Shown here in pieces: positions 47,286 through 63,718 of a stretch of 64,000 bases of DNA. The DNA is taken from the IMG/VR virus record IMGVR_UViG_3300042350_002797, positions 186,001 to 250,000 of that record; one strand, 5' to 3'. Positions within the stretch are counted from its first letter, which is position 1. Every line of letters begins with the position of its first letter. The position numbers were made by a program, and so were the translations under genes. The notes beneath the pieces are model-generated. The model did not search any database. It saw nothing but the letters and a program-made list of their open reading frames with translations, and was not told where the DNA came from.

Positions 47286-47288
47286 TAT

Positions 47289-47747: not shown

Positions 47748-47773
47748 TATTAAATAGCTATATAGGAGGACGT

Positions 47774-49317: not shown

Positions 49318-49327
49318 GTTTCAATAT

Positions 49328-50161
49328 ATGTACAATCATACTTCAGATACAAATACTGACCCGAGACATTTGTTGCGGTTGAAAATGGAAAAAATCGATG
49401 GATCAAGTTTTATGACAGACGGACCTCCGGCTGGTTACGACTTACCTACCGAATACATTGAAAAAATGAAAGTTATCAGTGAAAAGTATAAACCCATACA
49501 ATGGCTACCGTTGGATATACCTAAAATTGATATAGGCGATCCTAAAGAATTTTTAGAAATTTACGATAGTCAACGTTATCCTGTTGTAAGAATTAAACCT
49601 GATGTAGCAGAACCATGGAGTAAGGAAGATCATCCTTTTAAGCAAGATAGTAGCTGGAATAAAGCAGCATTTAATGGTCTTCATCTATATCAAAATCCTA
49701 TGATTGATCTTAAGCTAAGTACCTTTTACGGAAAAGTTTATCTTGGAGATATTCCTGTTTTCAAAAGGATTATTGAACAAGTGCATGATTATATTCCTCA
49801 TCACCCTTTTATCAGTATATTCATCTGGGAAAGTTTATCGACTATTATTCCTCATAGGGATGCCGCATCATATTGGAAATGTCCTACAGATTTTAGATCT
49901 ATGTTATATGATGAAAATGATAAACCTACTTTGTATGTAGCAGAAGACGGATCAGATGAACCAATCTATATTGACCTTCCTGAGGATACTAATACTTTTT
50001 GTTGGAGCAATGGAAAAATGGTTCATGGATCTGATTATCATGGAAAAAGAAAATTACTACTAATTATGACAGGAATACAGCATACAAGAAAATCTGTAGA
50101 GTTGTTTGATCGCAGTATTGCAAAGTATAAAGACAAATTAAATTATAAATTAGAAATGTAA
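49328..50161 (+). CDS. Putative Fe(II)/2OG-type oxygenase, paralog A
   Basis: PHRD...MVHGSD (HxD...H); WLPLDIP. Confidence 0.55.
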   Translation: MYNHTSDTNTDPRHLLRLKMEKIDGSSFMTDGPPAGYDLPTEYIEKMKVISEKYKPIQWLPLDIPKIDIGDPKEFLEIYDSQRYPVVRIKPDVAEPWSKEDHPFKQDSSWNKAAFNGLHLYQNPMIDLKLSTFYGKVYLGDIPVFKRIIEQVHDYIPHHPFISIFIWESLSTIIPHRDAASYWKCPTDFRSMLYDENDKPTLYVAEDGSDEPIYIDLPEDTNTFCWSNGKMVHGSDYHGKRKLLLIMTGIQHTRKSVELFDRSIAKYKDKLNYKLEM

Positions 50162-51030
50162 TGGATCTAAGTATCTTACAAAAAAAAATTGAAGAGGCGA
50201 AAGTCTCTCAATTTGATTATTCAAAATTAAACACTAGTTACACAAAACTAGGTCCTTCCTTGCATAAAAATGCAAGTTTTATTCAGGCTTCATGGTCACC
50301 CGAGATACCTATTTCTGAATCTTATCTAAAAAAAATAAAGTTATTAGAAGAAAAATATGAATCTATTTTTTGGTTACCTTTAGATATACCTAAAATTCAA
50401 ATAAGCGATTGGAAACTTTTTTTAGAAATTTGGGAAAGAGAAAAAATACCTATTGTTAAAAAAAACGATCCAGATTTTATTCAAGAATTTTACGGAATGC
50501 ATATTGCATCTAACCCATTAATTGACTTTTACTGTCATGATTTGTACGATTCAAAAGGTAAGATGATAGAAAATCAAATTTCGGAAAAAAGCGGATTTAC
50601 TCAAGGAAGAGACAATATAGGTTTATACACTAAAAAACTTTATAAAGATAGATTTTTTAATTCTTTAGTTAGTAATATTATGGCAACTTTTCCTATTAGT
50701 GTTATTAATACTATATCTATATTCGAAGTTATGAATGATGTAGCACCTCATAGGGAGGAAACTTGGTACTGGAAATGTCCTACTGAATTTAGAATAAATC
50801 TTTATGATGAAAATAAAACCCCTGTATTTTACGTAACGGATATCGAAAGCGGTGAAACGAGATATATAGATCTACCTCAAGATACAAACAGTTTTTGTTG
50901 GAGTAATGGAACTAAATTATACGGGGGTGATTATCACGGAAAAAAGAATTTTCAAATAGTTGTTAACGCGATATGGGATACAGCAAAGTTAGATAATTTG
51001 CTAAGTACAAGTTTAAAAAAATACGGATAA
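50161..51030 (+). CDS. Paralog B of the preceding oxygenase-like protein
   Basis: WLPLDIPKI, PHREETWYWKCPTEFR, DLPQDTNSFCWSNG..LYGGDYHG. Confidence 0.55.
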   Translation: MDLSILQKKIEEAKVSQFDYSKLNTSYTKLGPSLHKNASFIQASWSPEIPISESYLKKIKLLEEKYESIFWLPLDIPKIQISDWKLFLEIWEREKIPIVKKNDPDFIQEFYGMHIASNPLIDFYCHDLYDSKGKMIENQISEKSGFTQGRDNIGLYTKKLYKDRFFNSLVSNIMATFPISVINTISIFEVMNDVAPHREETWYWKCPTEFRINLYDENKTPVFYVTDIESGETRYIDLPQDTNSFCWSNGTKLYGGDYHGKKNFQIVVNAIWDTAKLDNLLSTSLKKYG

Positions 51031-51031
51031 A

Positions 51032-51571
51032 ATGGAATACTGGAAATATTTAGAATTAGATAATGTAGAAAAGATTCAAGAAAAAACTTTAACGTTTATT
51101 CGAGAAAAAACAGATTTTATGGATAAATCTAAATATAAAGGTCCATATATTAATTTGCCCTTTTTCGATTACAATAAGGATGTTCCAGAGCTTCAAGAAA
51201 GTTTTTTAAATTATGGGTTGTATGTCACTGGTATTCATATATTTTTAATGTGGAATAACACCGATTGTATTCCCCATAAAGATTATACAGATGCCATTGG
51301 TAGAGTGAATATCCCTATATTAAATTGTCAAGGATCTAAAACCATATTTTATAAAAATTTAAAATCTAAAAGATTAATGTTGCCTACTAGGTCTCCATTT
51401 TATATGACTATAAACAAAGATTACGAAGAAGTTGGCGGAGTTGAAATAGATCGTCCTACTATTGTCAGAATAAGTGAAGGACATACCGTAGTAATGAATG
51501 ATAAAAGTTTTCCTAGAATTACACTTACTGTTTCAACAATTCCTGATGTAGGATTATTATTGGACGATTAA
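51032..51571 (+). CDS. Putative Fe(II)/2OG oxygenase (cupin/DSBH)
   Basis: PHKD, VNIPILNC, EGHTV, PRITLTV. Confidence 0.6.
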   Translation: MEYWKYLELDNVEKIQEKTLTFIREKTDFMDKSKYKGPYINLPFFDYNKDVPELQESFLNYGLYVTGIHIFLMWNNTDCIPHKDYTDAIGRVNIPILNCQGSKTIFYKNLKSKRLMLPTRSPFYMTINKDYEEVGGVEIDRPTIVRISEGHTVVMNDKSFPRITLTVSTIPDVGLLLDD

Positions 51572-51891
51572 ATTTCGCTATCTTCCAAAGCAAAATCAAT
51601 TCCGTATTGATTCGTTATAATTTCAAAGTAATTCCAAATAAATTCGTTCTCCTCCTTAGAGTAAAAATTATTAAATTCTTCTTTACTTTCAAAAATTACA
51701 GAACTATATAATATTGTTCCTTGAGGTTGTTCGACAAATTTAGTTTCCTTTCTTATAAATCCAGGAACTATATACAATGCATTTAGATAAGGTTCATACA
51801 TCGAATGTGAACGTATATCTCGTATGAAATTCAATAACCGTTCTTTATCTGATGCATCTCTTGACTTTAAAATTGCAGTTCTGCTAAACAT
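51568..51891 (-). CDS. Small dimeric alpha-beta barrel (ABM-like) protein
   Basis: PGFI......SVIFESKEEFNNF pattern. Confidence 0.4.
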   Translation of the reverse strand: MFSRTAILKSRDASDKERLLNFIRDIRSHSMYEPYLNALYIVPGFIRKETKFVEQPQGTILYSSVIFESKEEFNNFYSKEENEFIWNYFEIITNQYGIDFALEDSEI

Positions 51892-51900
51892 AATTTTCCT

Positions 51901-52497
51901 TTAATCTTCAATTTTAAACGCTGTTCGGAATCCAATTCTTATAGGCCACGACCTATTTAATATCATATTTTTTTGATAATCATATTTTGGAATAGAATTC
52001 GACTCTAATACATGTTCAGTTATATAGTGATATTTAGATAAATTATAATCTTTTTTGAAATTTTTAGAAAATCTAAGAAGTCTATCTATTCCTCCAATCG
52101 AACGTACACCCAAGTGTTCTGCATTATAAGCAAAATGCCATCTATTTAATTTTCTTTTATTTTCCATTTCGTCGAAAATAATTTGATCAATGTCTTTAAA
52201 CATGTCGATCATTTCAGTATTATTAATTAAAAATCCTCTATTTTCGAATAAATGGTGTGCCCAACACCATGCCGGTGCCGTAGAAAATTCTTTCAAGATT
52301 ATTGCCCCTACTAGATTATTTTTGTTAAATATTCCAACATTAAAAAATAACTTATCGTTTAACATTGTTTCTGTAGACTGTATTAAGTAGTCTTGATACT
52401 GATGATCGGTATATCCGTTAAATACTTGAGGGTTTTTAACAAATAAATTTTTTAAAATACTTTGGTCTTCTTTTTGTAAAATTTTAATATTAAACAT
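51901..52497 (-). CDS. Hypothetical protein, possible GNAT fold
   Basis: IKILQKED..., FNVGIFNKNNLVGAI. Confidence 0.4.
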   Translation of the reverse strand: MFNIKILQKEDQSILKNLFVKNPQVFNGYTDHQYQDYLIQSTETMLNDKLFFNVGIFNKNNLVGAIILKEFSTAPAWCWAHHLFENRGFLINNTEMIDMFKDIDQIIFDEMENKRKLNRWHFAYNAEHLGVRSIGGIDRLLRFSKNFKKDYNLSKYHYITEHVLESNSIPKYDYQKNMILNRSWPIRIGFRTAFKIED

Positions 52498-52548
52498 GAT
52501 AACTTACTTATCATGTTCAAAAAAAAAATAATTTAATTAGGAAAATGT

Positions 52549-52881
52549 ATGTATATAAGAAGTTATAAGTTAGTATGTCAAGGTCAACCTAAAATGGATC
52601 GATTTCGAATAGTCACTACACAGGGGTTAAAATTCAATCAATTAATGAAAAATTACAATGTTAAATTTCAAGGGTTTGTTGAAGCACGTGATGATCACTA
52701 TGATAACGAACGTTGGGAAATTACCACTGTATGGGAATCAAAGTCAGATTGGGAAAAAGCTATGCAACATCCTATGCGAAAAATGTTCTGGTCTCGATTC
52801 GAAATGGAGGCGTTAAAGCATGATATTGATTTGACTATAACAGACAGTCTCGGTGAAACAATTAAACCTTTAGAAATTTAA
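52549..52881 (+). CDS. Antibiotic-biosynthesis-monooxygenase-like protein
   Basis: ITTVWESKSDWEKAMQHP. Confidence 0.5.
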   Translation: MYIRSYKLVCQGQPKMDRFRIVTTQGLKFNQLMKNYNVKFQGFVEARDDHYDNERWEITTVWESKSDWEKAMQHPMRKMFWSRFEMEALKHDIDLTITDSLGETIKPLEI

Positions 52882-52891
52882 GGAATATGAT

Positions 52892-53287
52892 ATGGAAAAA
52901 TTTATAAAAATACTGACAGTAACACAAACTGCTCCTGATATCGATGGCGAAATTAATGTGATAAAAACTTTAGAGACATCTGTTGCATGGCACCAATTAT
53001 ATTACTGTCATCCTCATCCATCTAATTATATCGACAATGTTACAGTTAATTTAAGTGAAGATAAATCGTATGCCGAGTTTCACGCTGATCATAATTCTTT
53101 GGAAACATATAACGACTGGTTTAAAACATTTGGAGAAATTTCAGAAGAGTTATATAAAGAATGTATCGATGAGTTAGAAACTGAAGGACTAATATTCGAA
53201 AGATTCTTTTCTGATGTAGATAATGCTCAATTAGAAGTGTTAGGCAATCATGCTCAACCTTTGAAAAATTTTATAAGCAAAATTTAA
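52892..53287 (+). CDS. Hypothetical acidic protein (possible ABM-like barrel)
   Basis: 131 aa; HNSLETYNDW; RBS AAGGA. Confidence 0.45.
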   Translation: MEKFIKILTVTQTAPDIDGEINVIKTLETSVAWHQLYYCHPHPSNYIDNVTVNLSEDKSYAEFHADHNSLETYNDWFKTFGEISEELYKECIDELETEGLIFERFFSDVDNAQLEVLGNHAQPLKNFISKI

Positions 53288-53290
53288 TAG

Positions 53291-54589
53291 ATGTTAAGAA
53301 TTATCGATGTTCTTCAAGTTATTGTAAAATATAATCTTGAGGAACATCTATTTCAAAATTCAAATTTCAAATTACTTTCAATCGCAAAACTTTCTTTTAA
53401 GAATCTATTCGGCATAACAACTCCGCACGGAACTTTTGAATATCGATTACGTTGTGCGCTAGAGGAACTAGGACCAGTTTTTATCAAATTTGGACAAATG
53501 TTATCATCTAGACCTGATTTAATTCCTGCAAGTATTGTTAAAGAATTAAAATTTCTTAGAGAGTCAGTAAAGCCTTTTTCTGAACATGATGTAGAAAAAA
53601 TAATAGAATTAGAATTAAAAAACTCTACAGAAAACATATTTAAAAAGTTTGATAAATCTCCTATTGCTGCGGGTAGTGTAGCGCAAGTTCATTATGCTGA
53701 ACTACACACTGGTGAGTTAGTTGCGGTTAAAATATTAAGGCCTAAAATAGAATGTATTATTAAAAAAGACATAAAGTTATTTAGAAATATTTTACAATTA
53801 ATTTTTTTGTATAATAAAAATTTAAAAAAAATTAAGATAGAAAAAATTTTAGATGAGTTATCAAATAGTTTAATGTTAGAACTAGATTTATTGATAGAAT
53901 CTGATCATATGAAAAAGTTTGCATCTAATATGAAACATGTTTCATATGTATGTGTTCCTAAAGTATATGACAAATATAGTACAAAAACTATTTTAGTGAT
54001 GGAAAGAATGTTTGGAATTCCTATTGATCAAAAACAACAACTTATTGATCAAGGTGTTGATGTTAGGATAGTAGTTCAACAAGGTGTCGAAGTAATGATG
54101 TTACAACTATTCCGAGACGGATTTTTTCATGCAGATCAACATCCCGGAAACTTATGGATTAAACCTGATGGATCTCGAATTTATTTAGATTTTGGAATAG
54201 TTGGGTCTATTACAGAGGCAGATAGAAAATCATTATTGCAAATTCTTTTCTTTTTATATTCTAAAAATAATAAAAAAACGATTGAAAAATTAATAGATGC
54301 CGGATGGTTAAACAAAAATCAAAACTTAGACCAATTAGAAGTCGATTTAATTGATATAGCACAGCTATTTGTTAATCGAAAACAAAAAGATTTTTCAATT
54401 GGTAATGTATTAAATAAATTTTTCAATTTAGTAGAAAATTATCAAGGCAATGTGCCTTATCAATTTACATTATTGGTAAAAACAATTTTAGTAACTGAAG
54501 GTATAGTAAAGCAACTAACACCTGATCTAAATATTCAAAGTATAGCAGAGCCGGTTCTTTTAAAGTTTTTTACTAAATCTTTTACTTAA
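53291..54589 (+). CDS. ubiB: UbiB/ABC1/AarF atypical kinase
   Basis: RLR.ALEELGPVFIKFGQMLS.RPDL, AAGSVAQVH, VAVK, FFHADQHPGN, LDFGIVG. Confidence 0.93.
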   Translation: MLRIIDVLQVIVKYNLEEHLFQNSNFKLLSIAKLSFKNLFGITTPHGTFEYRLRCALEELGPVFIKFGQMLSSRPDLIPASIVKELKFLRESVKPFSEHDVEKIIELELKNSTENIFKKFDKSPIAAGSVAQVHYAELHTGELVAVKILRPKIECIIKKDIKLFRNILQLIFLYNKNLKKIKIEKILDELSNSLMLELDLLIESDHMKKFASNMKHVSYVCVPKVYDKYSTKTILVMERMFGIPIDQKQQLIDQGVDVRIVVQQGVEVMMLQLFRDGFFHADQHPGNLWIKPDGSRIYLDFGIVGSITEADRKSLLQILFFLYSKNNKKTIEKLIDAGWLNKNQNLDQLEVDLIDIAQLFVNRKQKDFSIGNVLNKFFNLVENYQGNVPYQFTLLVKTILVTEGIVKQLTPDLNIQSIAEPVLLKFFTKSFT

Positions 54590-55339
54590 GAGAAATCCTA
54601 TATAACCCTCTATATCTATTTCCCACCAACGATGTTGAAGTATCAATCGTCCAGGATGAGCATGATGATTATTGTGCCATCCGAACCCCATACCTAACCA
54701 ACCTAACCATAAATTATTCGTAGTTGCATCGTCTGTAGAAAAATTTCTATAACCTGATCTATGACACCAATAGTTAACTGCACCTAGTCTAAAAAAATCC
54801 ACACAGTAGGCCAAACAGTACATCATGAAGTACACCGGATCAATCAAAACAAGTGTAAAACAAAATGTAAAAATTATTTTATAATGATGTCTATGAAAGA
54901 AAAGATAAAACGGGTCACGCAACATCTGTACAGCTAATTTTTTAGCATACTTGTCTTGTAAATATTCTTGTTCGTTATTTCCCTGAGGAAATGTCCAAGC
55001 ATAGAATACGTAGAACCAACTGTTATACATTGGACTATGAGGATCGTTAACTTTATCTGCTCTAAGATGATGAGCTTTATGCTGTATGACCCAAAATGTC
55101 ACTGGACCAATAGCGCCTAAAGTAGATAAAAATCCTAATAGCCATTTTACAGGTTTATAGGTTTCGAACTGACCATGAGCAAAATATCTATGTGCTGCTA
55201 CACCATTGCCTACTACACCAATGACAAACCAAATTACTAAGAAACTGATCCAATGATTAGGTAGTTCCCATATAGCAATTAGTCCCCATATATGAAAAGG
55301 TAGAAATACTACCCAAAAGTTAAATCCATATTTTTTCAT
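54560..55339 (-). CDS. Membrane fatty acid desaturase
   Basis: HRYFAH, HKAHH, DPHSP, GWHNNHH, WWEID. Confidence 0.9.
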   Translation of the reverse strand: MKKYGFNFWVVFLPFHIWGLIAIWELPNHWISFLVIWFVIGVVGNGVAAHRYFAHGQFETYKPVKWLLGFLSTLGAIGPVTFWVIQHKAHHLRADKVNDPHSPMYNSWFYVFYAWTFPQGNNEQEYLQDKYAKKLAVQMLRDPFYLFFHRHHYKIIFTFCFTLVLIDPVYFMMYCLAYCVDFFRLGAVNYWCHRSGYRNFSTDDATTNNLWLGWLGMGFGWHNNHHAHPGRLILQHRWWEIDIEGYIGFLLSKRFSKKL

Positions 55340-56085
55340 TGTTTAATCAATCTAATAATGTAAGCAGGTATATCAAACTCCCACCAACGTTCTTGATTGT
55401 TCCAAGCATATGGTTTAGCGTGATGTGTATTATGCCACCCTTCTCCTAATGTGATAAGATTGGCAATCCAACTATTACGGCTTTGATCTTTGACGTCCGG
55501 ATAAGGTCTATAACCATGTCTATGTGCTATAACAATAATAGCACTAGTGCTGTGTAAGCAAAGACAAGCAGGTATAGCAAACACATATATTATCATTAAT
55601 GGATCATAAGCAAATAAAATTGATATCCAAATTAGAATTACCAGCAAATATTTTTTGTGTAGTTCTCGTTGAAAGACATTTTCACGCATATCACGAACTA
55701 GTTTTAAATCTAATCTAGGCATATTCCATATACCGAACCATGCTCGAAAATTTCCCAGTATATAAGGACTATGAGGATCTCCAGGACGTTCTGCTGATCT
55801 ATGATGCTGTCTATGTACAGCTACCCAAGCTAATGGACTACCTACCACAGTAATAACACCTATAAGACTAAACAGTTGCTCCCAGAATCGATGTGTTTTA
55901 AAACTACGATGACTGAGTAGTCTATGGTAACCAATGTTAATACCAAGTACACCTATGATCCAATAGGTTACTAAGGACACAAATAATAAACTATATTCAG
56001 CAATGTAGATAGCATATATTATACCTATTGTAGCAATTACATGATTAATTACTTGTAGTGTTCTTACAGTTTGATTATGTGTCAT
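55336..56085 (-). CDS. Membrane fatty acid desaturase
   Basis: GYHRLLSH, HRQHH, GDPHSP, GEGWHNTHH, WWEFD. Confidence 0.92.
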   Translation of the reverse strand: MTHNQTVRTLQVINHVIATIGIIYAIYIAEYSLLFVSLVTYWIIGVLGINIGYHRLLSHRSFKTHRFWEQLFSLIGVITVVGSPLAWVAVHRQHHRSAERPGDPHSPYILGNFRAWFGIWNMPRLDLKLVRDMRENVFQRELHKKYLLVILIWISILFAYDPLMIIYVFAIPACLCLHSTSAIIVIAHRHGYRPYPDVKDQSRNSWIANLITLGEGWHNTHHAKPYAWNNQERWWEFDIPAYIIRLIKQ

Positions 56086-56644
56086 TTTTATCATCTACAA
56101 CTAGCCATCCTAATTTAAGTAAGTCATCTCGAATTTCTTCAGTGACAACGCCTTCAGACACAAACTTAGTACGAGCAGCCCATTCGCAGAAAGTCTCTTC
56201 ATCTTTATCCCAACTGCCTGCAAGCCCTCCCATGCCACTACAGTACCAGTCAATGTAGTCACCTTCTTGACGCATGTCAGCAATGATGCCTCCAGCATAG
56301 CGCCAACTAGCACTCCATGTCTCTTCTTTTAATACTGGCCACAAATCACGTTTTTGAAATTCATTATTACACATTGCTGCATATAAATTTTGAGCGTAAT
56401 GTTCTTTATTGCGAACTTTTTCCAAAATCCAATCGCAAGTACGCAGATCATATTCTAAGTTATTTTTTTGCCACTCAGGATTTGTTTCATTTTCCTCGGC
56501 TCGAATTCCCCAGCTATTATAAAACTCTAGCATAGTCTTGACATGTTCATCATTTTCAGGAGTGCGACCTTTTTCAGCCCATCTTTCAAGGGACTTAGAT
56601 TTTTGAAAACTATAACGATCAGGACTTTTACTTGGCTTGTTCAT
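56075..56644 (-). CDS. Hypothetical phage protein
   Basis: NLEYDLR, YAQNLYAAMCNN, SWRYAGGIIA, DYIDWYCSG. Confidence 0.65.
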   Translation of the reverse strand: MNKPSKSPDRYSFQKSKSLERWAEKGRTPENDEHVKTMLEFYNSWGIRAEENETNPEWQKNNLEYDLRTCDWILEKVRNKEHYAQNLYAAMCNNEFQKRDLWPVLKEETWSASWRYAGGIIADMRQEGDYIDWYCSGMGGLAGSWDKDEETFCEWAARTKFVSEGVVTEEIRDDLLKLGWLVVDDKNDT

Positions 56645-56664
56645 ATCTGTACTTATCGAAATTA

Positions 56665-56879
56665 AAAAGGAATGTGGGCATACAAGGCTGTTTTAGCGAC
56701 CTAAAGCTTTGTACTATATTCACTAGCTAGGTGATCTCAACAACTTTTCGGACTAATTGAAAAACTATCTGGACCCTCAGGAGTACCTGATATTCGCACG
56801 GGGATCAAACAACTGTACTACCGATTTCAACTAAGCCTATTCAGGTAACAGCATCCGCTACAATGATTATGCCCACAAC
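56665..56879 (-). ncRNA. Candidate ~210-nt structured ncRNA
   Basis: Has its own promoter, a 10-bp terminal stem TGTGGGCATA/TATGCCCACA, nested helices and a U-tract at the 3' end; no convincing ORF. Confidence 0.55.
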
Positions 56880-56882
56880 TAT

Positions 56883-56911
56883 ATTTTACATTCAGTAGAA
56901 TGTAAAGTCAA
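56883..56911 (-). promoter_or_regulatory. Sigma70 promoter for the candidate ncRNA
   Basis: TTGACT-17-TAAAAT. Confidence 0.7.
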
Positions 56912-56936
56912 AAAAATAGGCACCGAAGTGCCTATT
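56910..56936 (-). terminator. Intrinsic terminator
   Basis: AATAGGCAC-TTCG-GTGCCTATT followed by a T run. Confidence 0.85.
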
Positions 56937-57534
56937 ACATAGTTGGACCGTTGCCGTTTTTAAAACCAACTGTGCCACCTTCTGCTTCGATACGTTTGAT
57001 TACGTCTTCGAATAATATAGGCGTGTAGTCAGTTTGTTCTACACAAACGCAATGATAACGAGGATCGATTTCGTCACTGTACAGAACTTCACCTGTTTTA
57101 GCATTTATGCCACGTGCTTTTTTAACACGACCTGCATGTAAGTGTCCGTGTATGTTTACACCAAAACGTCCTAAACTTGCTTCGTGTACAGGAATATGAC
57201 TCAGTATCATTCCATTCATAACGTGGTAAGCACGAAGTTCTCGAAAATATTCGTTATATTCTGTATCACGAAAGATGTCGTGATTGCCTCGGATTAACAC
57301 TTTATCTCCGTTTAATCGAGACAATGTAGATAACGCTTTACGGTTAATAACCACATCACCTAAATGATAAACTTTATCGTTTGGGCGAACACGGTCGTTC
57401 CAACGGCGGATCATTTCTTCGTCCATTTCGCTAGGATCGTCCCAAGGACGAAGTTTAGTTCCGTCGTCGCGTAAGAATCGGCACACACCAGCATGACCAA
57501 AGTGCGTGTCGCTAACTAAAAATACTGCTGGCAT
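56935..57534 (-). CDS. Calcineurin-like metallophosphoesterase
   Basis: SDTHFGH, YHLGDV, RGNHD, LSHIP, HGHLH. Confidence 0.9.
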   Translation of the reverse strand: MPAVFLVSDTHFGHAGVCRFLRDDGTKLRPWDDPSEMDEEMIRRWNDRVRPNDKVYHLGDVVINRKALSTLSRLNGDKVLIRGNHDIFRDTEYNEYFRELRAYHVMNGMILSHIPVHEASLGRFGVNIHGHLHAGRVKKARGINAKTGEVLYSDEIDPRYHCVCVEQTDYTPILFEDVIKRIEAEGGTVGFKNGNGPTM

Positions 57535-58207: not shown

Positions 58208-58286
58208 TGGTCGGGGAAGAGGGATTCGAACTCTCGATCTCCTGCTCCCAAAGCAGGCGCTTTAAACCAGACTAAGCTACACCCCG
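58208..58286 (-). tRNA. tRNA-Pro(TGG)
   Basis: Cloverleaf; CCTGC-TT TGG GA-GCAGG; encoded CCA. Confidence 0.95.
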
Positions 58287-58291
58287 AAACT

Positions 58292-58367
58292 TGGAGCGGG
58301 TGATCAGGTTCGAACTGACGACATTCTGCTTGGAAGGCAGACGCTCTACCAACTGAGCTACACCCGC
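58292..58367 (-). tRNA. tRNA-Gly(TCC)
   Basis: TCTGC-CT TCC AA-GCAGA; ends TCCA. Confidence 0.95.
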
Positions 58368-58371
58368 ATGT

Positions 58372-58572
58372 GTTCTTGTTAGGCTACTAATCCTCATTAG
58401 CCCCTAACTGAGTTGTTACCCTGTCCCCTGACGTTCCTTATGGCTTGTGCCAGCTAAACCTACGATTTTTCTTGCACCCATGTAAGCGGGTTCTGAGGCG
58501 TCATCGTATGAGCCCTGGTATTTTGGTGACACCAACCACCCCCTTTAATAACGCAGAAGGGACTGCGAGGTT
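58372..58572 (-). ncRNA. Candidate ~200-nt pseudoknotted ncRNA between tRNA-Thr and tRNA-Gly
   Basis: GC-rich, multiple complementary segments, H-type pseudoknot near the 5' end and a hairpin at the 3' end. Confidence 0.5.
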
Positions 58573-58574
58573 CT

Positions 58575-58650
58575 TGGTGCTGGTCGCAGGACTCGAACCC
58601 GCCACCTACGGATTACAAATCCGTTGCTCTACCTGATGAGCTAGACCAGC
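58575..58650 (-). tRNA. tRNA-Thr(TGT)
   Basis: ACGGA-TT TGT AA-TCCGT; CCA. Confidence 0.95.
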
Positions 58651-58657
58651 GTAAACT

Positions 58658-58849
58658 TTATTCTACTACTGTTTCTTCAACTTTGTGTCCGTATTTAATT
58701 AAAGTATTAATGCGACGTTGAATTTTCATTTTGTGCTTAGGACGACAAGATCCGAGCAATTCATTTAATTGTTTAACATTCAAAGGACCAAGACGTGTTT
58801 TACCAGTCTTGGTTTTCATAGGATCACGTTTAAAACTTTTAGCTGCCAT
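58658..58849 (-). CDS. Small basic hypothetical protein
   Basis: 63 aa, RBS GAGGA; KTKTGKTRLGPLN. Confidence 0.6.
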   Translation of the reverse strand: MAAKSFKRDPMKTKTGKTRLGPLNVKQLNELLGSCRPKHKMKIQRRINTLIKYGHKVEETVVE

Positions 58850-59076
58850 TATTCCTCATCCTTAAATTCTTCAAGCAATTTTGCCTGCCATTCTGATTCG
58901 GATAAGTTATGTAGTCCAGTACAATATCCGCTGGCACTACGACCACATCCGCAAGGGACTTGATTTTCTTCTATAGTACTCATATTTTTACCTTTATTAA
59001 AAATAGCATCCCAGTTTTTATCATAAGTCGATTGACTTACACTAAAAGGTCTAGGACGAGATCCTTTGCCTGCCAT
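58849..59076 (-). CDS. Small protein with C-terminal CDGSH-like Fe-S motif
   Basis: MAGKGSRPRP...NWDAIF, then internal M and CGCGRSASGYCTGLH. Confidence 0.6.
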   Translation of the reverse strand: MAGKGSRPRPFSVSQSTYDKNWDAIFNKGKNMSTIEENQVPCGCGRSASGYCTGLHNLSESEWQAKLLEEFKDEE

Positions 59077-59077
59077 T

Positions 59078-59248
59078 TTATTCTGCTGTCCCAGTGTTAC
59101 GATCTGCTTTACTAGCCTTAGGCCTGATAGCTGCTGCTAGTTCTGCTTGAATCATTGCACGTTTAAATTCGTAACTACGAGGAGGCAACATGCTGGCCAT
59201 TATCATTTTACTAGACTTACTTAGTTTAAAATTACCTTTAGCTTTCAT
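59078..59248 (-). CDS. Small basic hypothetical protein
   Basis: MKAKGNFKLSKSSK...FKRAMIQAELA; GGAG upstream. Confidence 0.55.
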   Translation of the reverse strand: MKAKGNFKLSKSSKMIMASMLPPRSYEFKRAMIQAELAAAIRPKASKADRNTGTAE

Positions 59249-59414
59249 TTTTACGATTCTCCGGAATAAATTCATTCATTGCTACAACTAGCCATCCAGT
59301 AAATCCAGTAACATAGGCACTGAACATGTTTGGATTATCAAAATTAGTTCCCATACCAATAGCAGTAAAAACTACTATTAATACAGGAGTCCACTTCTTT
59401 AAGAATAATAGCAT
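59238..59414 (-). CDS. Small membrane protein (58 aa)
   Basis: Not in track. MLLFLKKWTPVLIVVFTAIGMG...NES*. Confidence 0.5.
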   Translation of the reverse strand: MLLFLKKWTPVLIVVFTAIGMGTNFDNPNMFSAYVTGFTGWLVVAMNEFIPENRKNES

Positions 59415-59435
59415 TTGCTTCTTTCAAAAAAAAAT

Positions 59436-59527
59436 TGGCGGAGATAGTTGGATTCGAACCAACGGTAGAGTTTAATCCCTACGACAGTTTAGCAAACTGC
59501 TGCCTTAAGCCTCTCGGCCATATCTCC
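59436..59527 (-). tRNA. tRNA-Ser(GCT)
   Basis: GCAGT-TT GCT AA-ACTGT; long variable arm; ends GCCA. Confidence 0.95.
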
Positions 59528-59535
59528 GTAAAACT

Positions 59536-59742
59536 TTACTTCTGATATTTCTGATTCATTTCGTCTATAGTTTGATCCCACTTTAATTGTGCTAAAGCTA
59601 ATGTATATACAAGATAACCAGCAAATGAAAGTGCCAACACTGCTACTGCCCAATTAGGCAAATAACTCATTACAAAACCGGTAACAAAACCAGTTAACAT
59701 TACTCCCGCAGTTATTAGAGCTGCTTTAAGTTTTATGTTCAT
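59536..59742 (-). CDS. Small membrane protein
   Basis: Two hydrophobic segments; RBS AAGGA. Confidence 0.55.
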   Translation of the reverse strand: MNIKLKAALITAGVMLTGFVTGFVMSYLPNWAVAVLALSFAGYLVYTLALAQLKWDQTIDEMNQKYQK

Positions 59743-59828
59743 TTCTGTTTCCTTTCAAGAACTTAACTAATGAACCTATATATTACATGAAGTTCAAAAA
59801 AAGTTCAAGAACTATTTTTACCAAAATC

Positions 59829-59927
59829 TGGTGTGGTCGGTAGGCTTCGAACCTACAAGAGCTTGGCTTTGCCTGTGCCCATCCCCGACCCAACGAGTGG
59901 GAGCTTTTCCAGTTTGCTTACGACCAC
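59829..59927 (-). ncRNA. tRNA-like RNA with non-canonical anticodon arm
   Basis: Acceptor GTGGTCG/CGACCAC-ACCA, D-arm and T-arm GTAGG-TTCGAAG-CCTAC are present, but there is no 5-bp/7-nt anticodon arm. Confidence 0.75.
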
Positions 59928-59932
59928 AGCTA

Positions 59933-59961
59933 ATTATATAGTCGTAAATGGTAACTGTCAA
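59933..59961 (-). promoter_or_regulatory. Consensus sigma70 promoter for the tRNA-like RNA
   Basis: TTGACA-17-TATAAT; predicted start site at about the RNA 5' end. Confidence 0.85.
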
Positions 59962-59963
59962 GC

Positions 59964-60143
59964 TTATTCTGCTCTCCATTCTACTCTGCCATATTGATCA
60001 ATATGAGCAATACTTTGCTGTCTTTTTACTTCAACGTATTCTCGACGATCTTCTATAATAGTCCCGCCTCTCTGAACCAATTCAGAGATTTTTATTTTAG
60101 CAACTTGTGTTGCTGGTTCAAATTTTTTAAATTTAATTTCCAT
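59964..60143 (-). CDS. Small hypothetical protein (59 aa)
   Basis: Not in track. MEIKFKKFEPATQ...IDQYGRVEWRAE*; RBS AAGGAG. Confidence 0.65.
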   Translation of the reverse strand: MEIKFKKFEPATQVAKIKISELVQRGGTIIEDRREYVEVKRQQSIAHIDQYGRVEWRAE

Positions 60144-60157
60144 AATTATCTCCTTAT

Positions 60158-60232
60158 TGGCCGGTCCGGAGAGATTCGAACTCCCGACAGCTGGTTTCGA
60201 AGACCAGAACTCTTCCGCTGAGCTACGGACCG
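60158..60232 (-). tRNA. tRNA-Arg(TCG)
   Basis: CTGGT-CT TCG AA-ACCAG; ends GCCA. Confidence 0.9.
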
Positions 60233-60238
60233 AAAACT

Positions 60239-60313
60239 TGGAGCGGATAATCAGATTCGAACTGATGACCTACACGTTGGCAACGTGTCGCACTACCACT
60301 GTGCTATACCCGC
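60239..60313 (-). tRNA. tRNA-Gly(GCC)
   Basis: ACACG-TT GCC AA-CGTGT; ends TCCA. Confidence 0.95.
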
Positions 60314-60317
60314 TTAT

Positions 60318-60399
60318 TGGTGCGCATGGAGGGACTCGAACCCCCACCCCGAAAGACTAGTTCCTAAGACTAGCGTGTCTACCATTCCACCACATGCGC
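60318..60399 (-). tRNA. tRNA-Leu(TAG)
   Basis: CTAGT-CT TAG GA-ACTAG; variable arm; ends ACCA. Confidence 0.93.
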
Positions 60400-60422
60400 A
60401 TAAAACTATTTAAAAATAAACT

Positions 60423-60500
60423 TGGAGCTTAGGGTCGGATTTGAACCGACGACTTTACGGTTTTGCAGACCGTTCCATTGGACCACTCTGGCACCTAAGC
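60423..60500 (-). tRNA. tRNA-Cys(GCA)
   Basis: ACGGT-CT GCA AA-ACCGT; U73. Confidence 0.93.
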
Positions 60501-60501
60501 G

Positions 60502-61062
60502 TTAAAATTCTACCCACTCACGAAATCTTACACTCAACGATAATCGTTGTTGTGATCCTGAGTTGAATATACTATGAGGAACATCTATTCTATACAATGT
60601 CGGTTCTGTCAAATAATAGCTGTCAATTTCTTCTACATCCTCTAACTCGAATACATGCCCTTCAGGCAAAGAATTATATTCTAAATATTCTTTAGATTCA
60701 ACTTTTTTCTTATCAGAGTTTTTAGTTATAAATTTTTCTTGATCTTTAACTTTATAAAAACTAGTTCTAGTTTCCGTTGTACAATTGTAAATTGGTATGT
60801 TAAGTGAAAAAGGAAAAGTTATTTTCCAATCAGTATGAATTGGCCATAATTTATTCGGAGGAACCGAAACAACTGCAACATCATTAACATTACTCCAATC
60901 AGTATATATTGAAATACCATCGACTAAAGGTTTACATTTTTGAAATAAGATCGGATCATGACTTCTAAAACCTCCATGTATTTTATAATCATCAGGTAGA
61001 TTCTTATAAACAATATCGCCAATTTTTTCCCAATCGGGTATTTTCACAGATTTGTATAGCAT
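60502..61062 (-). CDS. Putative Fe(II)/2OG oxygenase (paralog of the 51032 gene)
   Basis: IHTD, LNIPIYNC, PTLYRIDVPHSI.N, RLSLSVRF. Confidence 0.6.
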   Translation of the reverse strand: MLYKSVKIPDWEKIGDIVYKNLPDDYKIHGGFRSHDPILFQKCKPLVDGISIYTDWSNVNDVAVVSVPPNKLWPIHTDWKITFPFSLNIPIYNCTTETRTSFYKVKDQEKFITKNSDKKKVESKEYLEYNSLPEGHVFELEDVEEIDSYYLTEPTLYRIDVPHSIFNSGSQQRLSLSVRFREWVEF

Positions 61063-61072
61063 AAGTATATAT

Positions 61073-61708
61073 ATGACAAATTTTTATTCACTTTCTTTTC
61101 CTGTATTGCCTGACAATTTAAATCGACAACTTTTACAATATGCTCTCGATAAAAAAGATACATCAGGGTTCGACGTAATTAACATCAACGAAGTAAACCA
61201 GGAGACTTTAACATTTAAAGACTTTCATAAAGAAACAAACACAAATATAACTTCTTATTTTATAATCCCATTATCTGAAGAATTAAAAAAAGAAATACAC
61301 TCTTTTTTAGGAGATTCTTTGTTTCCGCATTCTAAAATAGATTATTATTTACATTATATAGTCGGAGATTCAAAATTTGTTCCCCATCGAGATCCTGGAA
61401 GGACAGTTTGTTTTCTTTATAATTTAACTGATGACAATGCCGATACAATTTGGTTTAAATCTAAAAATAATGATAAAAAAATAATGTATCTTTTAAATGA
61501 GATCGATCAGATTGAGTCTAAAAAATTTGAAAAGCACCAGTGGTATTTGTTAAACACAGATGAAATACATGCTGTTTTTGGTATTAACGGACCTCGTATA
61601 GGATTGACCTGCAATCTAACTACGAGTTTTTCTAATATAACTACCTTCGAATCTTTTGTAAAACAATACGACAATTTACTGGTTGCGGAGAACAGGAATC
61701 GAACCTGA
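61073..61708 (+). CDS. Putative Fe(II)/2OG oxygenase
   Basis: PHRD, T.WF, WYLLNT..IHAV, PRIGL; 3' end overlaps tRNA-Met on the opposite strand. Confidence 0.6.
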   Translation: MTNFYSLSFPVLPDNLNRQLLQYALDKKDTSGFDVININEVNQETLTFKDFHKETNTNITSYFIIPLSEELKKEIHSFLGDSLFPHSKIDYYLHYIVGDSKFVPHRDPGRTVCFLYNLTDDNADTIWFKSKNNDKKIMYLLNEIDQIESKKFEKHQWYLLNTDEIHAVFGINGPRIGLTCNLTTSFSNITTFESFVKQYDNLLVAENRNRT

Positions 61709-61756
61709 TGTCTTCAGCTTATGAGACTGACGAGTAAACCGTTTCTCCCCTCCGCC
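61680..61756 (-). tRNA. tRNA-Met(CAT), initiator-like
   Basis: TCAGT-CT CAT AA-GCTGA; G1:A72 mismatch; A11:U24. Confidence 0.85.
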
Positions 61757-61760
61757 ATTA

Positions 61761-62588
61761 TTAATCTGTATAAATTTTCGAATAATCGAAAGCTATTCGA
61801 TGTAAAACTCTATTGGCCATATCTTCAAATGGCCAACGTTTATGAATACTTAACCATTGTTCAGAAATTACAATGTCTCCGTCTTCCCAATCATGATGAT
61901 AAACATATTTTTCTTGTAAGATATGATCAGTTAAAAGATTCATAATTTCTTTAAACTCTTTTTCTTCGTAGTTTTCAAATCCGAAAATTTGTAGAAAAGG
62001 AAAAAATAAACCTTTGTTTCCTTCTTTATTAATTTGTACTAAATTAACCGGATTATCTTTATCTATATGTTCTATAAAAAATCTACTATTGGAATATGAA
62101 CCTACTTTGTATCCACAGTATACTTTGATATTGTTAATTTTTTCTTTTATGTCGCTAGGCAAATCTTCATAAGAACGGATGTTGTTTATCCAACTAGTTC
62201 TTGAACCTTTTGTTCCTTCTACACCATACAACCAAATTAATGGAGATCGTTGCTTGTTGCTAGGTTGATTTGCATGCCAATCTAAAGCAGCTTTATGACC
62301 AAATAATCCTTCCTCACCATACTCGTTCTTTTTTCCGGTAACACGTAGTATACCATCATTTACTCTGATGTGTTTAATTCTTTCTACGTCTGGAGGATAA
62401 TATTGATATTTTCCTATTTTAGAACAAAAATTTAACTCTTGTTCAGGAGTAAGTTTTTGATTTTTAAAAACAACAACCATGTTTTTTACAACTAACTTAC
62501 CTATTTCTATAATTTCTTGATCGGACAGATCATTTAAATTTTCATTTATAAAAACGGTCCACCCGTTGTCTGCATAACTTATATTCAT
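61761..62588 (-). CDS. TauD/TfdA family dioxygenase
   Basis: VVVFKNQKLTPE, DWHAN, WLY...GS.T.W, H.WEDGDIVI......HKR, RVLHR. Confidence 0.85.
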   Translation of the reverse strand: MNISYADNGWTVFINENLNDLSDQEIIEIGKLVVKNMVVVFKNQKLTPEQELNFCSKIGKYQYYPPDVERIKHIRVNDGILRVTGKKNEYGEEGLFGHKAALDWHANQPSNKQRSPLIWLYGVEGTKGSRTSWINNIRSYEDLPSDIKEKINNIKVYCGYKVGSYSNSRFFIEHIDKDNPVNLVQINKEGNKGLFFPFLQIFGFENYEEKEFKEIMNLLTDHILQEKYVYHHDWEDGDIVISEQWLSIHKRWPFEDMANRVLHRIAFDYSKIYTD

Positions 62589-62878
62589 AGATCTTCTACA
62601 TCTTTTCCATTATCTACATAAAATTTATCTTGTTTGTGTTTACGTTCCTGCATAGTTTCTTCTTTGAACCATTTTCGAGGATTACCACACATATAACACT
62701 TGGGATCACCGCAGTTTAGTATATGTTTCTTATGATTACGATGCGGTTGTTCTAAATACTTCCACTTACCATTGTGATGCATATAGTAATCTTTGGCTAT
62801 ACGCACTTGTCTTTCGATTGCCACTTCATCTTTATGAAGTCTCTTGCTATGATGAAACTTATCTAATTCTGTACTCAT
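62585..62878 (-). CDS. Hypothetical Cys/His-rich protein
   Basis: NCGDPKCYMCGNPRK; RBS AGGAG. Confidence 0.6.
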   Translation of the reverse strand: MSTELDKFHHSKRLHKDEVAIERQVRIAKDYYMHHNGKWKYLEQPHRNHKKHILNCGDPKCYMCGNPRKWFKEETMQERKHKQDKFYVDNGKDVEDL

Positions 62879-62892
62879 AACAATCTCCTAGT

Positions 62893-62982
62893 TGGCGGAA
62901 GCGGTGAGATTCGAACTCACGGAACATTTCTGTTCGTCTGTTTTCAAGACAGGTGCAATAAACCGGACTCTGCCACACTTCC
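62893..62982 (-). tRNA. tRNA-Ser(TGA)
   Basis: CTGT-CT TGA AA-ACAG; long variable arm; ends GCCA. Confidence 0.93.
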
Positions 62983-63001
62983 ATAATACTTATACTAATA
63001 T

Positions 63002-63093
63002 TGGTACCAGCGGTAGGAATCGAACCTACTCAAGAACGCTAATCTGGCGCTAAAAGGTGTATAAGACCTCTCTGACTTCCAAGTCTCGCTGGC
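63002..63093 (-). tRNA. tRNA-Ile(TAT), atypical
   Basis: GAGGT-CT TAT AC-ACCTT; 4-nt D-loop; long variable region; ends ACCA. Confidence 0.75.
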
Positions 63094-63112
63094 ATATTTG
63101 GTAGGAAAAATT

Positions 63113-63186
63113 TGGTAGCCCGTGACAGAATCGAACTGCCGTAACCGCCGTGTAAAGACGGAGTTCTACCATTAAACTAACGGGCC
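63113..63186 (-). tRNA. tRNA-Val(TAC)
   Basis: CCGTC-TT TAC AC-GGCGG; ends ACCA. Confidence 0.93.
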
Positions 63187-63242
63187 TTAAATTCTCTAAG
63201 ATAAGAATTTCGTTTTGTATCTTTTTTGTATCGTCTGTAGTT

Positions 63243-63265
63243 TCTACCAACTGAGCTAACCTCCC
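63243..63265 (-). pseudogene. 5' fragment of a tRNA gene
   Basis: GGGAGGTTAGCTCAGTTGGTAGA, followed by non-tRNA sequence. Confidence 0.6.
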
Positions 63266-63331
63266 ATACAGGAACACACTCACGTTTCTTATGTCTCTAT
63301 ATGCTATCTGCATATCGAGTGTGTTTTTATA

Positions 63332-63407
63332 TGGCGTCCCGTACCGGATTCGAACCGGTGTGTTCGCCGTGAAAGGGCGGTATCCTAGGCCTCTAGATGA
63401 ACGGGAC
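63332..63407 (-). tRNA. tRNA-Glu(TTC)
   Basis: CGCC-CT TTC AC-GGCG; ends GCCA. Confidence 0.95.
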
Positions 63408-63447
63408 TTTGTTTTTAAAATTGTTAAAGAACACTTACTATGCCAAC

Positions 63448-63476
63448 AGTATACAATCTTACTTTGTTACTGTCAA
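63448..63476 (-). promoter_or_regulatory. Sigma70 promoter in the tRNA cluster
   Basis: TTGACA-17-TATACT. Confidence 0.75.
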
Positions 63477-63483
63477 CAGTATT

Positions 63484-63559
63484 TGGTGCTGCCTCCAGGT
63501 TACGATCCTGGTTCCTCGGTTCTTCAGACCGGTGCTATGACCACATCAGCTAAAGCAGC
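63484..63559 (-). tRNA. tRNA-Phe(GAA)
   Basis: CGGT-CT GAA GA-ACCG; T-loop ATCGTAA. Confidence 0.88.
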
Positions 63560-63561
63560 TT

Positions 63562-63637
63562 TGGGGTGTCCTACCGGTATCGATCCGGTACTTCCAGTTT
63601 CACAGACTAGTATGCAGGCCACTACATTAAGGACACC
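63562..63637 (-). tRNA. tRNA-His(GTG)
   Basis: CTAGT-CT GTG AA-ACTGG; G-1:C73; T-loop ATCGATA. Confidence 0.9.
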
Positions 63638-63643
63638 ATTGTT

Positions 63644-63718
63644 TGGCACCGCCTAAGAGAATCGAACTCCTATTTCCTGGTTCGCAACCAAGTGTACTAT
63701 CCATTGTACTAAAGCGAT
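63644..63718 (-). tRNA. tRNA-Arg(GCG)
   Basis: CTTGG-TT GCG AA-CCAGG; ends GCCA. Confidence 0.85.

What the first reader, a model, noticed from the sequence alone, without database searches (positions are those of the whole stretch)
56665..56911. Independently transcribed ~210-nt structured RNA next to the biosynthetic cluster
On the minus strand a UUCG terminator ends the upstream gene. TTGACT-17-TAAAAT then places +1 about at the start of a 10-bp stem, TGTGGGCATA (56868-56877), that pairs with TATGCCCACA (56673-56682), followed by a U-tract. Nested helices GCTGTT/AACAGC, ACCTGAA/TTTAGGT and GCTT/AAGC give a rod, and TAGCG/CGCTA is an alternative or pseudoknot pairing. No credible ORF is present. 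The size and rod shape recall 6S RNA, a sigma70-holoenzyme decoy that could help shut off early transcription, but this is only an analogy.
Basis: partly seen in the sequence, partly recalled or inferred. Interest (0 to 1): 0.65.

Follow-up and report, generated by a model that had tools for sequence, protein, structure and literature searches.

The report
New structured RNA gene in jumbo phage
A 364-kb freshwater phage carries, beside its tRNA genes, a separate gene for a roughly 205-base folded RNA that matches no known RNA family, is kept in shape by evolution and is found as a discrete molecule in lake RNA samples, but its job is still unknown.

Summary
On the minus strand, window 56877 to 56673, a conserved terminator and a sigma70-type promoter are followed by a ~205-nt RNA closed by a 9-10 bp stem and a U-rich tail. 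Ten distinct homologues from freshwater metagenomes support nine helices. 22 of 52 pairs show compensatory changes, and 96.9% of cells pair against about 40% when partners are slid. Contigs from four metatranscriptomes in three studies cover only 56676-56867; none covers the downstream gene. No ORF is conserved.

The 6S analogy fails. The fold is a long stem carrying a side hairpin and ending in two arms, not a rod with a bubble. No Rfam family matches the window or six homologue loci. It is also not a tRNA, tmRNA or Y RNA.

The RNA lies just downstream of the phage's tRNA island, where some relatives carry a tRNA or tRNA-like gene. The nearest analogues are positional only: T4 species 1/2 RNAs, and GOLLD and ROOL. 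The downstream gene carries its own start-proximal signal (GATAAGTA-N5-ATG). This argues against a leader or riboswitch role.

Best reading: a new family of trans-acting, shape-dependent phage ncRNA, probably protein-binding. The gene is well supported; the mechanism is inferred.

The parts
56915..56936 (-). Intrinsic terminator of the upstream phosphoesterase gene: 9-bp stem, UUCG loop, T-run that overlaps the -35 of the RNA promoter.
   Evidence: The sequence is identical in all ten homologous loci.
56906..56911 (-). -35 hexamer TTGACT of the RNA gene's promoter.
   Evidence: TTGAC(T/A) is kept in all homologues, always with a 17-nt spacer whose sequence varies.
56883..56888 (-). -10 hexamer TAAAAT. 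It places +1 at about 56877-56876, the first bases of the closing stem.
   Evidence: Homologues have TAAAAT, TAAACT, TAACAT, TATACT or TATAAT at the same place. The phage's tRNA-like gene at 59927 has the same promoter-to-stem geometry.
56673..56877 (-). The structured RNA, about 205 nt. Its ends are inferred, not mapped.
   Evidence: Covariation model. Metatranscriptome contigs lie at 56676-56867, 56677-46, 56683-59 and 56676-56 with 0 mismatches. G-U cells number 32 against 4 A.C cells, which fixes the strand.
56868..56876 (-). P1 5' strand. It pairs with 56674-56682 to form the closing stem.
   Evidence: 9 pairs, 3 with double-sided changes. Coordinates.
56853..56867 (-). P2 hairpin: 3-bp stem and a 9-nt loop ending in invariant AGCG. 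The loop may pair with CGC at 56698-56695.
   Evidence: A-U changes to G-C in 3 sequences. The pseudoknot candidate pairs in 9 of 10 sequences without covariation.
56842..56852 (-). P3 and P4 5' strands. Their partners are 56687-56691 and 56699-56703. They continue the long stem.
   Evidence: P3 has 1 covarying pair and P4 has 2.
56751..56837 (-). Arm 1. P5 is 12 bp, with 7 covarying pairs. It encloses P6 and the P7 hairpin (56777-56790) and the invariant bulge GAAUAUC.
56708..56744 (-). Arm 2. P8 encloses the P9 hairpin (56720-56734), in which all 4 pairs covary and whose 7-nt loop is mostly UAGCUA. Conserved internal-loop strands UGAG and UAUAG flank P9.
   Evidence: This region looks like TTGAGA-16-TATAGT, but the last base of the '-10' is C or G in 4 of 11 homologues. 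The conservation is therefore at RNA level.
56660..56672 (-). U/pyrimidine-rich tail after the closing stem. It is the presumed termination region.
   Evidence: The tail is U-rich in most homologues but not in L104 and L105. The terminator scan did not flag it.
56650..56657 (-). GATAAGTA, 5 nt before the ATG of the downstream gene. It is a start-proximal signal of that gene, not part of the RNA.
   Evidence: CGATAAGTA is invariant in 10 of 11 homologues. Genome-wide, 9 of 75 ATAAGTA sites lie 0-8 nt before an ORF's first ATG, against 0-1 for three control 7-mers.
56075..56644 (-). Downstream gene, 189 aa, function unknown, no SD.
   Evidence: No Pfam or PHROG hit. The AF2 model is confident (pLDDT 86.7) but has no PDB fold match. 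Most homologues of this gene lack the RNA.
56935..57534 (-). Upstream gene, a calcineurin-like metallophosphoesterase.
   Evidence: Pfam PF00149 and PHROG 547.

Best explanation
This is a separate gene for a new family of phage non-coding RNA.

Shown:
- A conserved terminator-promoter cassette sits directly in front of it.
- The ~205-nt product folds into a long stem (P1, P3, P4) with a side hairpin (P2) and two terminal arms (P5-P7, P8-P9).
- The fold is maintained by compensatory evolution.
- RNA covering just this stretch is present in lake metatranscriptomes.

Inferred:
- Host sigma70 RNA polymerase starts at the first base of the closing stem.
- Transcription ends at the closing stem plus the U-rich tail.
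- The next gene is expressed from its own GATAAGTA start signal, probably as a leaderless mRNA.
- The RNA acts in trans through its three-dimensional shape. Its invariant residues sit in junctions, bulges and loops rather than in a linear seed. The most likely mode is binding or sequestering a host or phage protein connected with the tRNA/translation module in which it is embedded.
For: - Structure: 22 of 52 pairs have double-sided changes, every helix has at least one, and pairing is 96.9% against about 40% for slid controls.
- Strand: 32 G-U cells against 4 A.C cells.
- Promoter: -35, 17-nt spacing and TAnnnT are kept while the spacer sequence drifts.
- Expression: contigs from 4 RNA runs in 3 studies cover 56676-56867 with no mismatch, and none covers 56300-56671.
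- Not coding.
- Not a leader: most homologues of the downstream gene have no such RNA. Instead they have a promoter 6-7 nt before the ATG, or a tRNA abutting it.
- Separate start signal for the downstream gene: the GATAAGTA-N5-ATG motif recurs before other genes of this genome.
- Context: the RNA lies 1.3 kb from a 17-tRNA island on the same strand. In some relatives the same slot holds tRNA-Met, tRNA-Leu or a tRNA-like RNA.
Against: - No partner is identified, and no experiment bears on function.
- The ends are not mapped. Contigs cannot show ends or strand, and depths are low (2-10).
- The U-tract is weak in two homologues, and the closing stem is not a compact terminator hairpin, so read-through into the next gene is possible.
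- All homologues were found through the downstream gene. Linkage to that gene (10 of 10) is therefore partly an ascertainment effect and cannot be fully discounted.
- The family is small (10 variants) and restricted to one subclade.
Confidence: 0.6

Rival explanations
1. Cis-acting leader (riboswitch or attenuator). The RNA would be the 5' part of the mRNA for the 189-aa gene and the two desaturase-like genes, and would control them by ligand- or protein-dependent termination at the closing stem.
For: - It lies directly upstream, in the same orientation, in all ten variants.
- It has a multi-helix junction with invariant joining strands.
- Terminated leaders also accumulate as short RNAs, which would fit.
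Against: - Most homologues of the gene lack it.
- No alternative pairing of the P1 3' strand with downstream sequence is seen in the leader or early coding sequence.
- There is no SD to mask.
- The gene has its own recurrent start signal, GATAAGTA-N5-ATG.
- No riboswitch family matches.
Confidence: 0.12
2. 6S-like decoy of sigma70 RNA polymerase holoenzyme.
For: - The size is about 200 nt, with 5' and 3' ends paired.
- It is made from a host-type promoter.
- The unpaired strands UUGAG and UAUAG flanking P9 resemble -35 and -10 hexamers.
Against: - The covariation-backed fold is branched, with no central bubble.
- There is no hit to Rfam 6S models at E up to 10 or in six homologues.
- The -10-like element is not kept as a hexamer.
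Confidence: 0.06
3. tRNA-system RNA: a mimic, decoy or cofactor acting on tRNA-directed enzymes such as anticodon nucleases or processing and repair enzymes.
For: - It sits at the edge of the tRNA island.
- The slot is filled by tRNA or tRNA-like genes in some relatives.
- It is next to a highly conserved metallophosphoesterase that is itself embedded among tRNAs in relatives.
- T4 keeps stable RNAs of unknown role in the same position.
Against: - It has no T arm and no cloverleaf.
- ARAGORN and the Rfam tRNA and tmRNA models are silent.
- The genome has no RtcB or Ro gene.
- The P9 loop has U at the position where anticodon loops carry a purine.
Confidence: 0.12
4. Ribozyme or RNA-only assembly, as described for the phage-associated ROOL and GOLLD RNAs.
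For: - It has nine helices and several invariant unpaired segments in only 205 nt.
- It is phage-encoded and beside a tRNA island, like ROOL and GOLLD (10.1101/2024.12.08.627333).
- The P9 loop is the palindrome UAGCUA in 8 of 11 sequences, which could form a kissing dimer.
Against: - The palindrome is broken in 3 sequences.
- It is much smaller than ROOL or GOLLD.
- No known ribozyme model matches.
- The hammerhead-like CUGA...GAAA resemblance fails at an essential G in most homologues.
Confidence: 0.08
5. Not an RNA gene. The region would be conserved intergenic DNA (promoter or terminator signals) that happens to fold.
For: The single-sequence fold is no better than shuffles (z = -1.34).
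Against: - Compensatory changes occur in all nine helices.
- The G-U asymmetry is strand-specific.
- RNA contigs are limited to this stretch.
Confidence: 0.02

Closest known systems
T4 species 1 and species 2 RNAs (rnaC, rnaD)
   Same: They are small stable phage RNAs of unknown function. They are encoded on the same strand at the distal end of the tRNA gene cluster.
   Different: - There is no sequence or structure relation. Model R1 gives only noise on the T4 region, at most 9 bits and not at rnaC or rnaD.
- They are 139 and 119 nt, and rnaC has a tRNA-type T arm.
- To my knowledge they are co-transcribed with the tRNAs, whereas this RNA has its own promoter.
GOLLD and ROOL RNAs
   Same: They are phage or prophage-encoded, often lie near tRNA islands, are elaborately folded and have no known function.
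   Different: - They are 500-800 nt or longer, with pseudoknots and RNA-only cages.
- The Rfam models do not match here.
- Nothing here shows multimerisation.
6S RNA
   Same: Similar length, paired 5' and 3' ends, abundant stable transcript.
   Different: The fold here is branched rather than a rod with a bubble. There is no Rfam match, and polymerase binding is untested.
Bacterial Y RNA (YrlA)
   Same: A long terminal stem formed by both ends, plus a structured distal module. Such RNAs occur in some phages.
   Different: There is no Rfam YrlA match, no T-arm-like module, and no Ro/TROVE or RtcB gene in the 364-kb genome.

Membership tests
6S RNA (RF00013 and relatives) | Match to the family covariance model | tested here: not met
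   No hit at the gathering score or at E up to 10 on 56500-57100. None in six homologue loci at E up to 5.
6S RNA (RF00013 and relatives) | Extended rod: closing stem, large central bubble, terminal stem-loop | tested here: not met
   The covariation-supported fold has a side hairpin and a three-way junction with two arms.
6S RNA (RF00013 and relatives) | Binds sigma70 holoenzyme and templates product RNA | not testable with these tools
   Needs gel shift and in vitro transcription.
tRNA / tmRNA / tRNA-like | Acceptor stem plus T arm with a TPsiC-type loop; recognised by ARAGORN or Rfam tRNA/tmRNA models | tested here: not met
   ARAGORN and Rfam tRNAs nearby but nothing at 56673-56877. No T-arm sequence is present.
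Riboswitch / cis-regulatory leader | Travels with the regulated gene family | tested here: not met
   Of about 40 loci with the 189-aa gene, only 10 variants have the RNA. The others have a coding gene, a promoter 6-7 nt from the ATG, or a tRNA.
Riboswitch / cis-regulatory leader | Expression platform: alternative pairing, compact terminator or masked SD | tested here: not met
   No terminator is flagged at the 3' end, there is no SD, and no complement of the P1 3' strand lies downstream.
Riboswitch / cis-regulatory leader | Ligand-dependent structural change | not testable with these tools
   Needs in-line probing.
Y RNA (YrlA) | Rfam match and a Ro (TROVE) partner gene | tested here: not met
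   RtcB is also absent.
GOLLD / ROOL | Match to the family model; length over 500 nt | tested here: not met
   The length here is about 205 nt.
T4 species 1/2 RNAs | Stable RNA at the edge of a phage tRNA cluster, same strand | tested here: met
   The tRNA island is at 58208-63718 on the minus strand. RNA contigs are and the T4 layout.
T4 species 1/2 RNAs | Sequence or structure homology | tested here: not met
   Model R1 finds nothing at rnaC or rnaD with filters off.

The most novel reading that the evidence does not exclude
This would be a compact member of a so far unrecognised class of complex-folded phage RNAs that work without a protein partner. It would act as a ribozyme, or as a self-assembling RNA particle via its palindromic P9 loop, on the phage's tRNA or translation apparatus. 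That would make it a small cousin in function, not in sequence, of ROOL and GOLLD.
Probability: 0.1. Interest if true: 0.85.

Novelty: new variant of a known kind. Interest (0 to 1): 0.6.

Why it matters
Large, intricately folded non-coding RNAs are rare. Those understood so far turned out to be ribozymes, riboswitches or central cellular machines. Phage tRNA islands repeatedly harbour such RNAs (T4 species 1/2, GOLLD, ROOL), and none has an assigned function.

This one is small enough (~205 nt) for structure probing, cryo-EM or pull-downs, has a clean covariation-backed model, and is demonstrably present in natural RNA pools. It could therefore be a tractable entry point to the question of what tRNA-island RNAs do.

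Its narrow distribution (one subclade of uncultured freshwater jumbo phages) and the lack of a cultured host limit its immediate reach.

Tried and rejected
- Rfam at the gathering score on the whole window, at E up to 10 on the region, and at E up to 5 on six homologue loci: no match at the RNA in any of the three; only 15 tRNAs elsewhere in the window.
- blastn of the region and tblastn of the 189-aa gene against 50,697 phage records: no match.
- A 16-mer scan of IMG/VR gave three extra hits, all chance matches in GC-rich coding DNA.
- Two gapped or degenerate motif scans found only the window's phage line in IMG/VR and nothing in 185,579 bacterial and archaeal species.
- Model R1 found a single copy in the window's own genome. 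It found none in three complete and two partial related jumbo-phage records, and none in the other loci.
- TROVE and RtcB are absent from the genome.
- RNase P, SRP, hammerhead, loop E and anticodon-loop resemblances were checked by eye. Each was dropped because the key residues vary or come in the wrong order.
- The internal TTGAGA-16-TATAGT was rejected as a promoter. The final base of its -10 is C or G in 4 of 11 homologues, and its spacer is a covarying hairpin.
- The 189-aa protein has no Pfam or PHROG hit, no usable ESM Atlas hit, no Foldseek hit in the PDB and no VIA-align hit above Z 3.5.
- The catalogue of viral structured RNA candidates (PMC10690425) lists motifs of 29-151 nt. Its supplements are not held, so overlap with a fragment of this RNA could not be checked.

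Full report
**Setting**

The window is bases 186001-250000 of a 364,554-bp IMG/VR virus record rated complete. GC is about 35%. The finding lies on the minus strand between two genes:
- a calcineurin-like metallophosphoesterase gene, 56935-57534;
- a 189-aa gene without family assignment, 56075-56644.

Two desaturase-like genes follow the 189-aa gene. Further along is a fatty-acid-type cluster: Rieske, FabA, ACP, ketoacyl synthase and an ABC1 kinase. Upstream on the same strand, from 58208 to 63718, ARAGORN tRNA genes.

**Observation**

- the UUCG-loop terminator, 56936-56915;
- TTGACT-17-TAAAAT, 56911-56883;
- the complementary 10-mers at 56877-56868 and 56682-56673;
- a U-rich tail.

On its own, the fold is not better than chance (z = -1.34). 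A single-sequence argument would therefore be weak.

**Homologues**

Phage records gave nothing. Searching IMG/VR and JGI metagenomes with the downstream protein returned 48 loci. nhmmer and a covariance model found the RNA upstream of that gene in ten distinct variants plus one truncated copy. All ten are from the downstream-gene search, and a phosphoesterase gene end precedes the cassette in most of them.

Across these variants:
- the terminator is identical;
- the -35 is TTGAC(T/A);
- the spacer is always 17 nt but varies in sequence;
- the -10 keeps TAnnnT.

This is the pattern of a working promoter.

**Structure**

RNAalifold on the ten sequences gives 52 pairs in nine helices. Counting pairs gives the following:
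- 96.9% of cells form standard pairs, against 33-48% when the 3' partners are slid by 1-3 columns.
- 22 pairs have changes on both sides.
- 0 of 500 column shuffles reach the observed covariation score.
- Every helix has at least one double-sided change. P5 has seven, and all four pairs of P9 covary.

G-U cells outnumber A.C cells 32 to 4, so the folded strand is the minus strand.

The architecture, in window coordinates:
- P1: 56868-76 with 56674-82.
- P2: a hairpin at 56853-67.
- P3 and P4 continue the stem.
- Arm 1: P5 enclosing P6 and P7, 56751-56837.
- Arm 2: P8 enclosing P9, 56708-56744.

Two points stay open:
- The AGG at 56838-36 can pair either with CCU just before the P4 3' strand or with the end of P5. 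Both options tolerate the observed changes.
- The invariant AGCG of the P2 loop can pair with CGC at 56698-95 in 9 of 10 sequences, but nothing covaries.

The 'rod' is not.

**Coding**

Short frames exist because the sequence is conserved. They lack ATG and SD, and they shift frame through indels in three homologues.

**Expression**

Four metatranscriptomic runs from three studies (aquatic, freshwater, lake water) each hold one contig of 170-192 nt lying at 56676/7/83 to 56846-56867 with no mismatch. None has anything on 56300-56671, the first 345 nt of the downstream gene. One run also has an identical contig on the phosphoesterase gene.

DNA carry-over would not stop at the borders of the RNA in four libraries. 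Contigs cannot give strand, exact ends or level, and depths are low, so the ends quoted are inferred from the promoter and the closing stem.

**Is it a leader?**

Three observations argue against it:
- In most relatives the 189-aa gene follows a coding gene directly. In others it has a TTGACA-17-TATAAT promoter only 6-7 nt before the ATG, or a tRNA-Leu whose 3' end abuts the ATG. This gene is therefore often expressed without a leader.
- In the RNA-bearing loci, the 9-mer CGATAAGTA sits 5 nt before the ATG and is nearly invariant. Genome-wide, 9 of 75 ATAAGTA sites lie 0-8 nt before the first ATG of an ORF, against 0, 0 and 1 for three control 7-mers. ATAAATA behaves the same way. From my own knowledge, this resembles the T4 late promoter TATAAATA. 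I read it as the gene's own start-proximal signal, but this is an inference.
- There is no SD to mask, and no alternative partner for the P1 3' strand.

The caveat is that all homologues were found through this gene. Linkage to it is therefore not an independent observation.

**Identity**

- No Rfam 15 family matches, at any threshold tried, in the window or in six divergent homologues.
- ARAGORN is silent on this stretch.
- The genome has no Ro/TROVE or RtcB gene.
- The RNA is single-copy in its genome.
- It is absent from three complete relatives of about 350 kb.
- Two conserved-motif scans find it in no bacterial or archaeal species genome.

It is thus a small, phage-only family confined to one subclade.

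**Context and closest analogues**

The slot after the phosphoesterase terminator is variable in relatives. It holds a tRNA-Met, an odd tRNA-like RNA with its own promoter, or protein genes. The window phage has that tRNA-like RNA as well, at 59829-59927, so the two RNAs coexist.

T4 shows the same layout: species 1 RNA (with a T arm) and species 2 RNA lie at the end of its tRNA cluster. Model R1 does not match either.

GOLLD and ROOL are larger phage RNAs that also sit near tRNA islands and form RNA-only cages.

**Mechanism**

Shown: the gene, the fold, and the presence of the RNA in natural RNA pools.

Inferred:
- a sigma70-type start at the first base of P1;
- termination at P1 plus the U-rich tail;
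- action in trans through shape.

The invariant residues lie in junctions, bulges and loops: GAAUAUC, CCGAAAAG, UGAG/UAUAG and AGCG. This is typical of protein- or ligand-binding RNAs rather than antisense regulators. I commit to a protein-binding decoy or scaffold connected with the tRNA/translation module as the most likely mode, at modest confidence. The leader, tRNA-enzyme decoy, RNA-only and 6S readings remain as ranked rivals.

**Verdict**

The 6S analogy is not supported. Function is open.

Noticed in passing
window 59829-59927 (-), promoter 59962-59934; relatives L022:4673-4783, L117:1375-1480, L121:701-807, L007:~3862-3980: A 99-125-nt tRNA-like RNA with its own consensus promoter. 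It has an acceptor stem, a canonical T arm and an encoded CCA, but an irregular long middle. The Rfam tRNA model does not call it. ARAGORN calls only the window copy, as a 99-nt tRNA-Pro(tgg). In build and position it resembles T4 species 1 RNA, which also has a T arm.
   Followed up: partly
whole genome G000; in the window at 56650-56656, 52505-52511, 2013-2019, 62987-62993 (all minus strand): ATAAGTA (and ATAAATA) sits 0-8 nt before the first ATG of 9 of 75 (and 9 of 69) sites, with no SD in between. Control 7-mers give 0-1. One copy lies 4 nt before a tRNA-Ser. It may be a phage-specific, T4-late-like promoter giving leaderless mRNAs.
   Followed up: partly
L101, L102, L109, L113 around 1460-1500; L128:~1022-1106: In relatives, the 189-aa gene has TTGACA-17-TATAAT ending 6-7 nt before its ATG, or a tRNA-Leu(taa) whose 3' CCA overlaps the ATG. 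Either way it would be a leaderless mRNA made directly or by tRNA processing.
   Followed up: no
window 56935-57534 (-): The metallophosphoesterase is unusually conserved. The best 80 matching loci kept are 82-97% identical in protein, out of at least 600 related IMG/VR stretches, while its neighbours vary. In relatives it sits among tRNA genes. A role in tRNA or RNA end repair is worth testing.
   Followed up: no
window 45571-56094: A lipid-type auxiliary cluster on a phage: Rieske protein, FabA-like dehydratase, acyl carrier protein, ketoacyl synthase, ABC1/UbiB-type kinase and two fatty-acid-desaturase-family proteins.
   Followed up: no
window 56075-56644 (-): The 189-aa protein gives a confident AlphaFold model (pLDDT 86.7, pTM 0.84). 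Nothing in the PDB matches it: Foldseek gives E above 5 and VIA-align gives Z of at most 3.5. No Pfam or PHROG family matches either.
   Followed up: yes
G000:C1:264461-264488 (-), outside the window: A 28-nt copy (89% identical) of the UUCG terminator hairpin recurs elsewhere in the genome. A similar hairpin precedes another ATAAGTA-ATG gene start.
   Followed up: no
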